From Salpingoeca rosetta (taxonomy: Eukaryota > Protista > Choanoflagellata): a stretch of 64,000 nucleotides of DNA. The position numbers and the translations under genes were made by a program. Below are positions 6,179 to 11,017 of this stretch, in pieces. The notes beneath the pieces are model-generated. The model made no database searches. It saw only the letters and a program-made list of their open reading frames with translations, and was not told where the DNA came from. The stretch covers positions 2,569,144-2,633,143 of the forward strand of contig JAWQFM010000002.1 in the NCBI GenBank assembly GCA_033442325.1, read 5' to 3'. Positions within the stretch are counted from its first letter, which is position 1, and the number at the start of each line of letters is the position of its first letter.

Positions 6179-6638
6179 GCTCGGGATTGAGGACGTAGGA
6201 GGAGAAGAGAGGGAGGAAGAAACGGTCGTCCGTCAGTCAGCAGCGTCCGTCAACAACAGCTGGTTGCGACAGGATGAAATGTTAGTCAGACCAAAAATGG
6301 TGTGTCCTCCTGTTGATGGACGCGACAACACTGATGGTGTGACTGATGTGTGTCATAGCATCATGTGTCTGATGTGTCACTTTCACATGACGACGGCTGA
6401 GTCACAACACAAGGTCAGGCATACATTCACGCAAACACACAGCCACGGGCAGAGTGTCTGTCTGTTGTGTGTGTGTGCGGTGGGCATTTTCTATCCCACC
6501 TTCCTTCCCACGAGAACACGAGCAGCCAAGCGACATCTGTTTTCTTTTGCTGAGTCCACTGCACCGCTGCGTCTCCTTCTCACCTCTCGTCTGGTTCTTC
6601 TGTTGCGCTGTTGACTGTGGGCCAACACAACCAGCACA

Positions 6639-9600
6639 ATGACCAGGCCGAACAGCTGCTGGACTGCAGGGCATGCGTTGGGGTTGATGCTTTGCATCGT
6701 GTGCTCTTGCAAGCTGGTGGATGGTGGGGCTGCAAAAGTGTACGGATTTACCTCGTTTGCGCAGGAGTTCAATGTTGCCTGCCCGAATGGACAGGGATTT
6801 CGTGGACTTCGCTCCATTCACGAGAATGAATATGTAAGATGAAGCTTGAGATGCATGCTTGAGGTTTGCTGTGGCTCGCTCGAAAGCACATGCAATTGCA
6901 CCTTGTGTATGTGAGTGTGTCTTCAAGCTGTTTCACTCCACAGAAACAACTGGAACGACTTGGCTTTTAATCCTTGTCTTCAACCCCGTCTCTCGTGCTG
7001 TTTTGTTCTGCCTTCTTGCTTCCGTCTGTGATGCTCGTCAACCACGGGTTGTGATCTCAGGGTGAGACTAAGCGAACACTCGGTGTTTGAGGTGAAGTAT
7101 AAGTGTTTCTGCGCACACGCAAAGCTTGCCTGTTGACCGTTGCTGACTTCTTGGTGAGCTGCACTCACGTCTCACCTTGTTTGCCTTGTTTGCTCTTGTC
7201 AGAGGACCGCAAGTGGAGGTTTTTGTGTGAAGATGTTGGATATGGACCAAATGACAACGTCGCTAAGTTTGGCACACTGGAAGACCGGAAGGAGAACTAC
7301 GATCATCCACAAACCGTAGTTTGTCCTCGGCACCACTGTTCGTTCAAGAAGTCAAGAGTGCTGTTTGTGTCTACCACGCTGGCTTCGATCACCGCTTCTG
7401 CGTGTGCACAAGCTCACACCTGCGCTGGTCCGTTTCACCTGTGGCTTGTGGCTGATTGACACTAGACTTGGCAGGGGCTCTCTCAAAGTTTCACGGGCAT
7501 TACAGCGATCGGCTTTGGATCTGGACATGTCGTCAGGCTACAGATGCAGTGCTCTCTAATTGTCAGAGAGGTGACTACGTTAACAATTGGGACGAACAGT
7601 TCAAGTTCATAGCTTCGGATAATCGCGTGATCACGGGTGAGACTTCGTGTTGTCGTGAGTACTGTAGGCAGTACATTCTGGTACGTACTTCAGAATACGT
7701 GCGCATACTTGGAGTACCAATGTAAACCCGCGCTTTGCTGAGTCTGTTCCTGCTCGTGTTGACAGGCGTGAACTCCTATCATGACAACAACAAGGAAGAC
7801 CGTCGATTTCGCTTCACCACCTGCCGAGTAAGTCAAGTGCAACCCCTTAAAGTGGTCGCGGTGATCTCCATCTTTTTCGTTGCTGAAGTTTAATTGCATT
7901 GCACGGGAATGCACACATTGCCGACAACAAGGTGGACTGTTCGCCGTTCTACGAGCAGCATGACACGGGATGTGTGCCGACAGGTGCGTACAATATCGAG
8001 TGTACACGGTTCCTCTGCACGAAGTTTGGAACAGATCGTGTGTCGCTTCCTGTGGCATGGCTTCACAAGCATGTTTTGTGGTGTGATGTTCACTGTACAG
8101 AACTTAAGCCGTCGCCTTCGCCCTCCTACGATGAGCACTTCCAGCAAACTTTCTTCGTCACATGCCACAACAACCAGGGCCTGGTCAGAGTTCGTTCTGA
8201 CTATGACGAGGGCCAAGGTGAGGATTGCGCGACTGTCATCTTGCGGTCGTGCGCTTGCCTGTTGGTTTCATTTCCGCCCGCCTTGCACTGTTCAAGCCAA
8301 CATTGTCTGCATTTTACTGTTTCATGTTGTGTGGTTGTCAGGGGATCGCAAATGGCGGTTTCAATGCGCGCCAGTCGGAAGTACTCAGGTGGCAGACTTG
8401 ACCGAAATGAGTACCGCTGGCGTCGAGGACCTGCATGGCGCCGTCAACATGATATGCCCCACAAACTACTGTAAGCTTGTCTTGTGTCAATTCTGGCGTG
8501 TTTGTTGTGGTCAATGTGTAGGTTGCTTCCATAGACGCACCATCATAGATCATGTGCTCACCTTGCAGACGTGCGTCCGTGACTTACGATGCAGATTTGC
8601 GTGCAATCCAGTCTGGTTTTGTCCAAGCAATGAAAGATCGGTTGTTCAAATTCCAATGTCAGCGCATCACGGGTGCAATTCTGACAAACTGCCAGCGACG
8701 CGAGTTTGTGAACCCTGTTCACGGCGCCCTTGACGTTGACGTGGAACGTCATCAAGTGATTGCTGGTACGTAGCAAGCGTCCTTGCTCGATGAGCGTGAT
8801 TGGCAGGCAAGTGAATTTGACTCCAAGCTCACGCAAAGCCGCCTGATCGTGCTGATGGCGAATGCAGGGCTTGCTTCGATGTACTCTGCAGTTGACGAGG
8901 ACAGGCGGTGGCACGTGACAACGTGTGATGTGAGTATATTTTGTTTCCATGTGGCTGGTCTGGTACGCCTGTCTCGCCAACACGGCTATATGGTGCCTTC
9001 ATCATGTTCCTTCTTCACGGTATTCCTTGATTCCCTTCCGTGGTTATAGGTATCGTGTGCCAACGGCTTTACATCAGACGGTGCTCGAGGCTGCATTGGT
9101 GAGAGCCAGCGTTCGCATTGTACAGAGAGAAGGGGTGATGCGGGAGAAGCGAACTGCCAAGAAACTCGAGAAACTGGACTGCCTTTGGGTTTTCAACTGC
9201 ACGAACCCTCAGTACCAATATGCTCTTCGACGCCGCATTGTTAGAAGCGCCATGCGGAAAACTGGTTCTCCAAGATGGGATTCTTTCAGGCAACTGTCAA
9301 GGACGTGTCGGTAAGTGATCAAGTGAATATGGAGAGTGCTAGCGGCCAATCCTTCAGCCATAGTCTCGCAGGATACTAACACCCCCCAAGACTGCAAGTC
9401 TCCCTTCATCAGCGTTCATTTCTGATTCCATGGCATACGTTCTAAATCGACGATCAGGTGATGAGTGCCAGTACAGCGGCTGCAACCTTGGATATCGGCT
9501 GTTGAGTCCACCTGTGACGCGCGTTTGCCAGGCGGATGGCTCATGGACGAACACGGCACCAGTCTGCAAACGTGTGTTGGCTTGCTCGACATGAGCGAGA

Positions 9601-11017
9601 ACGGCGTGTGACTTGATATCGTTCAGTCGGGGACAAGCACTGGTGCCAACGTTGCGCGCCACGACTCTAATGGCTTTCCTACGAACCATGTCATCTTTTT
9701 GCTCCCTGCAGGCATTGAAAGTTGTGGACCCCAGGTGCTGCCCAATGGTCATGTGATCGGTGCCTGTGACGGTGGCATTGGTACGTGTGTTGCTGTTGAT
9801 TACGAAATGTTGCCACTGTCAGAGCACTTGCTGCATGGGAGCGCTTTTCGGATCCCGCACATTGCTGCGCTCATGTGCCTGCATCTCAATCTCACCCAAT
9901 GATTTAGGTGACGCGTGCACATTTTCTGGATGTGAGGATGGCTTCAAGCTGTCGGAGACAGGCGTGACGCGCGTGTGTCAAGCCGATGGCACCTGGAGCA
10001 ACTCTCCGCCACACTGCGAGCGTGAGTACCCAAGACGCTGCACCTGTGTATGCATGCCTTCATGAATGCCACATCACATCAATTCTTTGCCTGTTGGTCA
10101 GGCAGGGAGACTTGAGTTGGTCGTTGTTAGAACACTTCCCTGGTTCTCTTACAGCCCTGCCGTTGTATATGCGCGATAACAGGTGTACCATGTAAACCAC
10201 TGACTCTACAACACGGCCAACTTGTTGGAGACTGTGGCGGTGATTTCGGTTCGTGTTTGCGATAGACATTTGGCTGTTTGTTCGTAGGAAGTGAAGGAGG
10301 GCGTGAGTGAGTGAGTGAGAGTGTGTGTTTGTGTGTGCGTGTGCGTGTTCAGTACTGGCTATGTACATGTATGCTGGTGCATGTACGTTTATATGTTCAC
10401 GCGTGAACGCTCAAGTTTTGGATGTAATTGCCTGCGTGTGTAACCTCACTGGCCGTACAGGAGACACGTGTGTTTATCGCGAATGCAATGATGGGTACAG
10501 CATGTTGGTGCCTGTCGGACCTGATGATCCGGTGAAAAGTGAGTAACTACCAGCTGTCCGCTCATGAATGGATGGGGTTGAGTGCTTTCTGCTCTGCGTG
10601 TACGTACCAATTGCCTGTTTATCCACATTCATCGATCGCGGTTTCGTCGCAGGCGAGGGGACTGAGTTCAAACACGCCACGTCCCCCGTGTCACGCACGT
10701 GTATGGGGAATGGCACGTGGAGCAACGGGACCCCGATTTGTCACCGCACTCCGACCACCTGGTTTCATCACATTCCGAGCATCTTTTGGGACACAATGCA
10801 AATCCTGTGGAAGGATATCACTTTGGTTGTCGAAGGAACCTGCCACGCTATGGACAAACTTCAATGCTGGCTCCAGAACGTTGACACCCGTATTGTCTGG
10901 GCTGTCGGCAGCACGTGTGTCCTGATGTTGCTTGGTCTGTACTGGTTCGATGCCCCTCTCCCAGCAGCAAACGAAGCTGCTCAGAACAGTGGCACAGCCC
11001 GAGCACTCACAACTTGA
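6639..11017 (+). CDS. Predicted type I membrane protein: signal peptide, 2 dermatopontin/HAAF-like domains, 3 sushi/CCP domains, TM helix, short tail
   Basis: Hydrophobic N-terminus (HALGLMLCIVCSCKLVDG). Six S-x7-DR-x-[WF]-x-[FWV]-like repeats ending in Cys (SIHENEY-E-DRKWRFLC; SKFHGHYSDRLWIWTC; SYHDNNKEDRRFRFTTC; SDYDEGQGDRKWRFQC; SGFVQAMKDRLFKFQC; SMYSAVDEDRRWHVTTC), plus VNNWDEQFKF. Three CCP modules (GCNLGYRL...TRVCQADGSWTNTAPVC; GCEDGFKL...TRVCQADGTWSNSPPHC; ECNDGY...SRTCMGNGTWSNGTPIC). TM IVWAVGSTCVLMLLGLYWF. Stop at 11015-11017. Confidence 0.85.

What the first reader, a model, noticed from the sequence alone, without database searches (positions are those of the whole stretch)
6834..7204. 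Candidate single-nucleotide exon (G at 7061) in the dermatopontin-sushi gene
Seen in sequence: exon 1 ends ...GAA TAT|gtaag (6833/6834, phase 0). The next large exon starts after ...ttgtcag (7202) with AG GAC CGC, which needs phase 1. Between them is ...gatctcag G gtgaga (AG 7059-7060, G 7061, GT 7062), preceded by a pyrimidine-rich tract. Adding this one G gives TAT-GAG-GAC-CGC (Y-E-D-R), restoring the S1...D9-R10 spacing seen in four of the other five repeats. The duplicated second domain has a phase-1 intron in the same codon (CAA G|gtgag...cag|GG GAT CGC), so G|gtgag at 7061/7062 looks like the ancestral donor. The nearest larger candidate exon (6944-7061) has an in-frame TAA. Inference: a new intron inserted 1 nt upstream of the old donor left a 1-nt exon, or an equivalent recursive-splicing site. 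Such exons are very rare and standard gene predictors miss them.
Basis: partly seen in the sequence, partly recalled or inferred. Interest (0 to 1): 0.85.

Follow-up and report, generated by a model that had tools for sequence, protein, structure and literature searches.

The report
One-nucleotide exon in Salpingoeca gene
RNA reads show that the dermatopontin-sushi gene PTSG_01519 of the choanoflagellate Salpingoeca rosetta carries one extra G between its first two large exons, best explained by a one-base exon that the public gene model misses; the papers I found describe such exons only in a few plant and fungal genes.

Summary
Raw RNA reads (23 reads, 15 start points) and transcript contigs from two other studies join 6833 directly to 7202. 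The mRNA therefore reads GAATAT-G-AGGACCGC. The canonical in-frame junction 6833>7205 was not seen; it would have been listed from 3 reads.

Read as one intron, the gap would be GT..CA or TA..AG. The other nine introns that the reads confirm in this gene are all GT..AG. G7061 (ctcAG|G|GTgagact) is the only G in the gap flanked by AG and GT/GC. All four splice sites around it score like real sites of this gene. Chance gives such a site in 0.2-0.9% of trials.

Five paralogues and the gene's own second domain have a phase-1 intron at this spot (G|gt...ag|AG GAY CGN).

The public protein (XP_004997497.1) reads YDRKW and lacks the Glu.

Not shown: splicing intermediates or lariats that prove 7061 is the base used.

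The kind is known from Arabidopsis APC11, plant VPS55 and Fusarium CYP621A. I found no report for choanoflagellates or animals. Five dynein heavy-chain genes of the same genome show equally well-formed candidate 1-nt exons; I could not check these with reads.

The parts
6639..6833 (+). Coding part of exon 1 (Met1-Tyr65: signal peptide and the start of dermatopontin domain 1). It ends in phase 0.
   Evidence: sequence, frame. Pfam DERM profile positions 2-28. RNA depth 41-52 in X22, and the joint leaves at 6833; single copy in the genome.
6834..7060 (+). Intron A, 227 nt, GTAAGA...CTCAG. It has a pyrimidine-rich stretch (about 6990-7030) and a possible branch site in cgtcAAc (7036-7042).
   Evidence: donor 6.1 bits (true donors 2.0-8.9), acceptor 2.8 bits (true acceptors -5.7 to 8.5); depth falls to 5 or less; no other copy in the genome.
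7061..7061 (+). Proposed one-nucleotide exon, G. It is the first base of codon 66 (GAG, Glu).
   Evidence: the mRNA has one G between 6833 and 7203; this is the only AG-G-GT/GC in the gap; chance 0.002-0.009. Its use is inferred, not directly shown.
7062..7202 (+). Intron B, 141 nt, GTGAGACT...TTGTCAG, phase 1. It is the counterpart of the family-wide intron in the codon before Asp-Arg.
   Evidence: donor 8.0 bits, acceptor 4.0 bits; its first 8 bases equal the confirmed donor at 7637; paralogues have an intron at the same codon; depth 0.2.
7203..7337 (+). Next exon. It starts AG GAC CGC AAG TGG (..E-D-R-K-W).
   Evidence: joint into 7202/7203, next joint at 7337>7466. DERM profile from position 30 at Asp; single copy.
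8218..8341 (+). Paralogous phase-1 intron of dermatopontin domain 2 (CAA G|gtgagg...ttgtcag|GG GAT CGC). It serves as the reference for the ancestral arrangement.
   Evidence: joint 8215>8340, cut +2, GT..AG; 11 reads in X22 and contigs of X4 and X5.
7203..7204 (+). Second AG of the CAGAG tandem acceptor. The public model uses it (TAT|GAC, no Glu).
   Evidence: XP_004997497.1 reads NEYDRKW; this junction is not listed.

Best explanation
The gene PTSG_01519 has a constitutive one-nucleotide exon, G7061, between two ordinary U2-type GT-AG introns: A (6834-7060, 227 nt) and B (7062-7202, 141 nt). The G is the first base of a GAG codon. It restores the family's conserved ...x-E-D-R-x-W spacing and keeps the frame.

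The AG of intron A lies inside the U1-binding window of intron B's donor (AGG|GUGAGA). The two introns therefore cannot be recognised at once and must be removed one after the other, as at a recursive splice site that leaves one base behind. Either order gives the same mRNA.

Shown here: the mRNA sequence, that the genome sequence at the donor is correct, and that the locus is unique. Inferred: that 7061 supplies the G, that splicing is sequential, and the order of the two steps.
For: 1. RNA.
- The joint 6833>7202 (equally 6834>7203) has 23 reads from 15 starts in X22. It also stands in contigs of X4 and X5 with no other letters. That is three studies.
- No 6833>7205 joint is listed.
- The nine other introns are all GT..AG.

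2. The genome is right at the donor.
- An unspliced contig of X5 (6817-6967) and one of X4 (6905-7231) match the window with 0 differences and 0 gaps. No inserted letters are listed.
- Runs X1-X3 hold all sampled words of the stretch.

3. Exon 1, exon 2 and intron A are single copy in the 55 Mb genome.

4. G7061 is the only AG-G-GT/GC in the gap. Chance of AGGGTRAG there is 0.002-0.009.

5. A weight matrix from 15 introns of this gene.
- Donors: 6834 = 6.1 bits, 7062 = 8.0 bits. True donors score 2.0-8.9.
- Acceptors: 7060 = 2.8 bits, 7202 = 4.0 bits. True acceptors have a median of 4.1.
- The alternative TA donor scores -9.0 and the CA acceptor -3.3.

6. Family context.
- Five paralogues have S-x6-G|gt...ag|AG GAY CGN at this spot.
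- Glu precedes Asp-Arg in 25 of 59 repeats.
- The Pfam DERM profile leaves exactly one position (29) between Tyr65 (28) and Asp (30).

7. The same genome holds equally well-formed candidate 1-nt exons in five dynein heavy-chain genes. There the missing base cannot be borrowed from a flank.
Against: - No read or contig shows an intermediate, either A removed with B kept or the reverse, and no lariat was examined.
- Because 6834 is also a G, the mRNA alone cannot tell G7061 from G6834.
- The total gap of 368 nt is not unusual for this intron position in paralogues (280-369 nt), so length gives no support.
- Intron A contains a higher-scoring unused acceptor (6943, 5.5 bits) and donor (6911, 10.3 bits). 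The small matrix therefore does not by itself predict the observed choice.
- Read depth in the first 100 nt of intron A (about 5) is higher than in the rest (0.2-0.7), and I cannot explain this.
Confidence: 0.87

Rival explanations
1. One 368-nt intron with non-canonical ends. Either the cut falls after G6834 (TA...AG, 6835-7202) or the acceptor is CA at 7201 (GT...CA, 6834-7201). AGGGTGAGA at 7059 would then be a coincidence.
For: The aligner reports exactly this joint (GT..CA, both = 1), and no intermediate using 7061 was seen. The total length matches paralogue introns at this spot (280-369 nt).
Against: - The TA donor scores -9.0 bits and the CA acceptor -3.3 bits.
- The nine other introns that the reads confirm are GT..AG.
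- Perfectly good AGs lie 1 and 3 nt downstream of the supposed CA, and a GT lies 1 nt upstream of the supposed TA. From general knowledge of the spliceosome, the first and last G of an intron are needed for both catalytic steps.
- A full AG|G|GTGAGA site arises by chance in 0.2-0.9% of trials.
Confidence: 0.07
2. The public model is right. The main mRNA uses GT6834 and the second AG (7204) and gives TAT|GAC, with no extra base.
For: It is canonical and in frame, and it is the deposited model (XP_004997497.1, NEYDRKW).
Against: This junction is not listed in X22, where 23 reads show the other form, and it is absent from the contigs of X4 and X5. It may still exist as a minor NAGNAG isoform below 3 reads.
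Confidence: 0.01
3. A sequence error or a strain difference. The real donor is TATG|GTAAGA, one G was lost in the assembly, and the intron is an ordinary phase-1 GT-AG intron.
For: It would give the observed mRNA and the family's usual structure.
Against: - An unspliced contig of the same run that carries the spliced form (X5, 6817-6967) matches the window with no gap.
- No inserted letter is listed among the unspliced X22 reads.
- Runs from two further studies, kind not on record, hold 0.93-1.00 of the sampled words.
Confidence: 0.02

Closest known systems
Arabidopsis thaliana APC11 single-nucleotide exon (Guo and Liu 2015, PMC4674806)
   Same: It is a constitutive 1-nt exon flanked by AG and GT inside what was annotated as one intron. 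It is needed for the frame and was missed by annotation. The authors also argue for sequential removal of the two introns, defined intron by intron.
   Different: The base is A, not G. It cannot be confused with a flanking base. It was proven by substituting the base in reporter constructs. It is conserved across land plants (PMC8831610). Here the proof by substitution is missing and the base equals the first intron base.
Plant VPS55 1-nt microexon (Yu et al. 2022, PMC8831610)
   Same: It is a 1-nt exon with a conserved GTRAGT donor, absent from reference annotations, and found with RNA-seq.
   Different: It is alternatively included in some lineages and is conserved over hundreds of millions of years. 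Here I see one isoform and have no orthologue to compare.
Fusarium CYP621A one-nucleotide exon (Nelson and Syed 2026, PMC12940212)
   Same: It was inferred from exon phase, a conserved motif, an intronless relative and public reads. That is the same line of argument as here (paralogues plus RNA reads).
   Different: It is the middle base of a Gly codon and is conserved in 20 species. It is a fungal gene with very short introns.
Recursive splicing at ratchet points and RS-exons (Drosophila, vertebrates)
   Same: An AG juxtaposed to a GT is used first as an acceptor, after which a donor is used at the same place. Splicing is necessarily stepwise.
   Different: Classical ratchet points leave 0 nt and serve very long introns. 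Here 1 nt stays in the mRNA and the introns are 227 and 141 nt.
Spliceosomal twin introns (stwintrons) of fungi
   Same: Two introns are so close that they must be excised in sequence.
   Different: In a stwintron the inner intron interrupts a splice signal of the outer one and nothing is left between them. Here both introns have complete signals and a base remains.
NAGNAG tandem acceptors
   Same: CAGAG at 7200-7204 offers two acceptors 2 nt apart. The public model picks the second.
   Different: The spacing is 2 nt, not 3. The reads show use of the first AG together with an extra G, not a choice between the two AGs.

Membership tests
Nuclear single-nucleotide exon | The mature mRNA holds one base that is not contiguous with either neighbouring exon under canonical GT-AG splicing. 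| tested here: met
   joint 6833>7202 (GT..CA, or shifted by one TA..AG) in raw reads and in contigs of three studies; the frame is kept and Glu66 is added.
Nuclear single-nucleotide exon | A matching base in the intervening DNA is directly flanked by AG upstream and GT downstream, with usable splice signals. | tested here: met
   ctcAG|G|GTgagact is unique in the gap; all four sites score within the range of confirmed sites; chance 0.002-0.009.
Nuclear single-nucleotide exon | The genomic sequence at the junctions is correct and the locus is unique. | tested here: met
   unspliced contigs show 0 differences and 0 gaps; other runs hold all sampled words; single copy.
Nuclear single-nucleotide exon | Changing the candidate base changes the mRNA base (the test used for APC11). 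| not testable with these tools
   This needs genome editing or a minigene in S. rosetta.
Nuclear single-nucleotide exon | Two separate introns are excised, shown by intermediates or two lariats. | not tested
   The read laying cap is 1. One search lists no joint 6833>7061 or 7061>7203 at 3 or more reads.
Classical recursive splice site (0-nt ratchet point) | AG|GT with nothing left in the mRNA. | tested here: not met
   One G remains. The two true AG|GT sites in the gap (6863/6864 and 7091/7092) cannot add a base.
NAGNAG alternative acceptor as the full explanation | The mRNA forms differ only by the choice between the two AGs, with the donor at 6834. | tested here: not met
   GT6834>AG7202 gives a frameshift with a stop. 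GT6834>AG7204 is not seen.
Introner or transposon-born intron (for intron A) | Many similar copies in the genome. | tested here: not met
   the only match of 6834-7060 in the 55 Mb genome is itself.
Dermatopontin family (Pfam PF14704), the host gene | Matches to the DERM profile and the repeated D-R-x-W-x-F-x-C motif. | tested here: met
   exon-wise matches, best 1.5e-10; six S-x7-D-R repeats in two domains; at least 76 exon matches of the family in the genome.

The most novel reading that the evidence does not exclude
Salpingoeca rosetta may be a lineage in which one-nucleotide exons recur. There is the G in PTSG_01519, whose mRNA is verified here. There are also a T in a DNAH2-like dynein gene and a C followed by a T in each of four other dynein heavy-chain genes; these are inferred from invariant motifs and well-formed AG|N|GT sites. 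They would have arisen where a second (or third) intron came to lie 1 nt from an existing splice site, which forces stepwise splicing. That would make this genetically tractable organism, one of the closest relatives of animals, a place to study how a spliceosome handles exons too small for exon definition.
Probability: 0.6. Interest if true: 0.8.

Novelty: new member of a known kind. Interest (0 to 1): 0.7.

Why it matters
One-base exons test the limits of splice-site recognition. No exon definition is possible, and the two flanking sites overlap each other's binding windows. The papers I could search describe them for three gene families only, in plants and fungi, and none for choanoflagellates or animals.

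Here the mRNA evidence comes from three independent studies. The family context shows which intron is the old one.

S. rosetta can be genome-edited (my own knowledge, not checked here). If so, the APC11-style substitution test could be done in the native locus.

In practice the finding corrects a deposited protein, since XP_004997497.1 lacks Glu66. It also shows that gene predictors hide such cases by choosing a nearby in-frame acceptor. Other examples, such as the dynein genes noted here, are therefore probably hidden in this and other genomes.

Tried and rejected
- **Tandem duplication as the origin of intron A.** The starts of A and B look alike (GTAAGAtgAAGC against GTGAGActAAGC, and TGYTTGAGGT 228 nt apart). 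Ungapped identity at offset 228 (21 of 40) is no better than at many other offsets (up to 23 of 40). A against B by local alignment gives P = 0.17. Rejected.
- **Introner or repeat origin.** There is no other copy of 6834-7060 in the genome.
- **Homology of intron B with the domain-2 intron.** The signal is weak: a 12-nt exact match with P = 0.012, and P = 0.046 globally. The other paralogous intron pairs show none. Not usable.
- **RNA structure.** A helix between CAGGGUGAGAC (7058-7068) and GUCUCACCUUG (7169-7179) appears in the minimum-energy and centroid folds. Overall folding is no better than shuffles (z = 0.2 and 0.7), and about one such repeat is expected by chance by my own rough estimate. 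Recorded, not claimed.
- **Other two-step routes.** Routes through the 0-nt AG|GT sites at 6863/6864 and 7091/7092 cannot add a G. The exon 6944-7061 has a TAA and has no read depth.
- **Intron length as an argument.** Dropped after paralogues showed introns of 280-369 nt at this spot.
- **A protein with the extra Glu in public collections.** The 90% cluster of the public model has that one member only. I did not type the spliced protein into any tool, so a direct look-up was not done.
- **Orthologues in other choanoflagellates.** Searching with exon 1 found only distant relatives.
- **Public model of the DNAH2-like dynein.** The S. rosetta protein itself did not appear among the hits, so I could not see how the public annotation treats that site.

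Full report
**What is in the sequence**

The window belongs to a 55.4 Mb, 68-contig assembly (contig 2, 2569144-2633143). The gene is Salpingoeca rosetta PTSG_01519 (XP_004997497.1, EGD80936.1, UniProt F2U0K8). It encodes 670 aa and is annotated as a sushi domain protein.

Its coding sequence starts at ATG 6639. Exon 1 ends with GAA TAT at 6833 in phase 0, followed by gtaaga. At 7059-7063 the sequence reads AG G GT (ctcag g gtgagact). The next large exon follows ttgtcag (to 7202) and starts AG GAC CGC, so it needs one base from upstream. A second AG at 7203-7204 would allow an in-frame TAT|GAC.

Pfam finds dermatopontin (PF14704) pieces exon by exon. Tyr65 aligns to profile position 28 and the Asp at 7205 to position 30, which leaves room for exactly one residue.

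**The RNA test**

The look-up of sequencing runs listed runs of the same organism from several studies. I laid two raw-read RNA runs (X21, X22) and the contigs of two older runs from other studies (X4, X5) on 6450-9450.

- The junction between the first two large exons is 6833>7202. It skips 368 nt, its ends read GT..CA, and one base fits on either side, so it is equally 6834>7203 with ends TA..AG.
- It is carried by 23 X22 reads with 15 different starts. It also stands in one contig each of X4 (depth 164) and X5 (depth 128, 136 nt on the shorter side). The aligned contig pieces listed for this region show no other letters and no gaps.
- The canonical junction 6833>7205 does not appear in the table, which lists anything seen in 3 or more reads from 2 or more starts.
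- The nine other junctions in the stretch are all GT..AG, with introns of 102-146 nt.

Building the coding sequence from these junctions gives a protein identical to the public one over its first 404 residues, except for one added Glu after Tyr65. The public model used the second AG and so hid the problem. Direct splicing from 6834 to 7202 without the G would shift the frame and hit a stop.

**Artefacts**

- The same X5 run that carries the spliced contig also has an unspliced contig covering 6817-6967. X4 has one covering 6905-7231. Both match the window with no difference and no gap, and no inserted letters are listed for the unspliced X22 reads.
- Runs X1-X3 hold all sampled words of 6600-9000. 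A lost G at the donor is therefore unlikely.
- Exon 1, the next exon and the 227-nt stretch between 6834 and 7060 each match only themselves in the genome. No hidden paralogue can have supplied the reads.

**Where the G comes from**

Taken as one intron, the gap has ends that no known spliceosome uses efficiently, while a GT and two AGs lie within 1-3 nt of the supposed cuts. The only way to get the observed mRNA with canonical sites is through G7061, which is the single AG-G-GT/GC in 6834-7210.

I built a small weight matrix from 15 introns of this gene: nine confirmed by reads, and six obtained by mapping the public protein.

| Site | Score (bits) | Range or median of true sites (leave-one-out) |
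|---|---|---|
| Donor at 6834 | 6.1 | 2.0 to 8.9 |
| Donor at 7062 | 8.0 | 2.0 to 8.9 |
| Acceptor at 7060 | 2.8 | median 4.1 |
| Acceptor at 7202 | 4.0 | median 4.1 |
| TA donor at 6835 | -9.0 | |
| CA acceptor at 7201 | -3.3 | |

The first eight bases of intron B (gtgagact) equal those of the confirmed intron at 7637. The end of B (ttgtcag) equals the end of the confirmed intron at 8341.

AGGGTRAG arises in 0.2% of 20,000 dinucleotide shuffles of the gap. From its rate in the whole window, 0.009 are expected.

Two facts weaken a purely score-based argument. Intron A contains an unused acceptor (6943, 5.5 bits) and an unused donor (6911, 10.3 bits) that score higher.

**Family context**

The genome has at least 76 exon-level matches to the dermatopontin profile. 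In five paralogues (loci L006, L007, L009, L013, L021) the first repeat ends S-x6 followed by G|gt. After an intron of 280-369 nt it resumes ag|AG GAY CGN, which is a phase-1 intron inside a Glu codon just before Asp-Arg. The gene's own second domain has the same intron with a Gly codon (8218-8341), confirmed by reads.

Glu is the commonest residue before Asp-Arg, in 25 of 59 repeats. So the acceptor at 7202 and a G|GT donor are the ancestral pair. In PTSG_01519 the only G|GT that fits lies 227 nt downstream of the end of exon 1.

**How it most likely works**

Two ordinary introns, A (6834-7060) and B (7062-7202), flank a one-base exon. U1 pairs with three exon bases and six intron bases at a donor (established knowledge). 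The AG that ends intron A therefore lies inside the U1 site of intron B, and the two cannot be engaged together. Removal must be stepwise.

- If A goes first, TAT is joined to G and the donor becomes AUG|GUGAGA.
- If B goes first, the acceptor becomes cucag|GAGGAC.

This is the combined model of intron definition plus recursion that Guo and Liu proposed for APC11. I could not determine the order.

X22 depth is about 5 over 6854-6954 but 0.7 and 0.2 further on, against about 50 in the exons. I cannot explain this gradient.

**Origin**

That fits the anatomy, but I found no trace of how it happened.

- There is no other copy of intron A in the genome.
- There is no significant similarity between A and B.
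- There is no excess identity at the suggestive offset of 228 nt.
- The total length of 368 nt is normal for this intron position in paralogues.

Recruitment of an internal AG|G|GT after loss of a G at the original donor cannot be excluded.

**What is known**

In the papers I could search, nuclear one-base exons are described for three cases:

- Arabidopsis APC11, proven by substituting the base (PMC4674806).
- Plant VPS55, together with APC11 across land plants (PMC8831610).
- Fusarium CYP621A (PMC12940212, 2026), which calls itself the second example.

Searches combining choanoflagellate or Salpingoeca with microexon, micro-exon or recursive splicing found nothing relevant, and the gene's locus tag appears in no paper. 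I therefore rate this a new member of a known kind.

**A lead from the scan's own notes**

Two unchecked first-reader notes on the same genome propose one-base exons in dynein AAA1 regions. I looked at the loci.

- An intronless paralogue reads QCVVFNCSDQLDY.
- One paralogue has a single ordinary intron (AAC T|gtacgt...ccag|GT).
- A DNAH2-like gene reads ...GTC AAC|gtaagt, then ...ttgtgtcgttgcag|T|gtgagtact, then ...gcag|GC TCT GAT.
- Four further paralogues read ...TTC AA|gt, then ...ag|C|gtaag (or gtacg), then ...ag|T|gtaag, then ...ag|GC TCN GAT.

Orthologues of the DNAH2-like gene from Monosiga brevicollis and animals all read V-N-C-S-D/E. The T (and C) are therefore required and cannot come from a flanking base. 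I had no reads call left to verify these.

They make it likely that this spliceosome handles AG|N|GT exons as a matter of course. That raises my confidence in G7061, and it suggests the phenomenon is recurrent in this species.

**Verdict**

- The one-base exon at 7061 is the best explanation (0.87).
- A single non-canonical intron is the main rival (0.07).
- The public protein model lacks Glu66.

Noticed in passing
G000 C3:815900-817700 (L025, - strand); C21:1106100-1108050 (L022, -); C20:944500-946450 (L023, -); C7:1251400-1253200 (L024, +); C23:470300-472400 (L026, +): Five dynein heavy-chain genes break the invariant V-F/V-N-C-S-D motif of AAA1 so that 1 base (T) or 2 bases (C, then T) are missing between the long exons. 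Each missing base has a well-formed candidate one-base exon (for example gcag|T|gtgagt, or cag|C|gtaag followed by ag|T|gtaag). Orthologues read NCS(D/E). Not checked with RNA reads.
   Followed up: partly
window 6414-6634: A 5'UTR intron (CAAG|gtcagg...accag|CACAATG) ends 4 nt before the start codon. It is spliced in the X4 contig (loose end at 6633 matches 6382-6411). The X5 contig runs unspliced from 6450 to 6833, so there are alternative 5' ends or a retained intron.
   Followed up: partly
window 7058-7068 and 7169-7179: An 11-bp inverted repeat (10 Watson-Crick pairs plus one G-U) pairs the one-base exon and both adjacent splice sites with a stretch 23-33 nt upstream of intron B's acceptor. 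It is present in the predicted minimum-energy and centroid folds, but overall folding is not better than shuffles.
   Followed up: partly
window 7113-7147 and about 8836-8860: Intron B and the intron 8766-8867 share a motif, CACGCAAAGC(t/c)..GCCTG..GCTGA(c/t). The global alignment has z = 5.5 against shuffles. It ends in a branch-site-like CTGAY. Its meaning is unknown.
   Followed up: no
window 6854-6954: Same-strand RNA depth in the first 100 nt of intron A is about 5 in X22, roughly 10% of exon depth. It is 0.7 and 0.2 in the next two bins and 0.2-0.75 in the bins lying wholly inside two other introns. Unexplained.
   Followed up: no
window 6639-11017: The public protein XP_004997497.1 (670 aa) maps to the window with GT-AG introns throughout. 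It agrees with the RNA junctions over its first 404 residues except for the missing Glu66.
   Followed up: yes
window 7764; 8199; 8892: Letter differences in the reads. A>G at 7764 lies in an acceptor and looks like overhang of spliced reads. G>T at 8199 (6 of 31 reads, 2 starts) and T>G at 8892 (3 of 54 reads) are minor and look like errors or duplicates.
   Followed up: no
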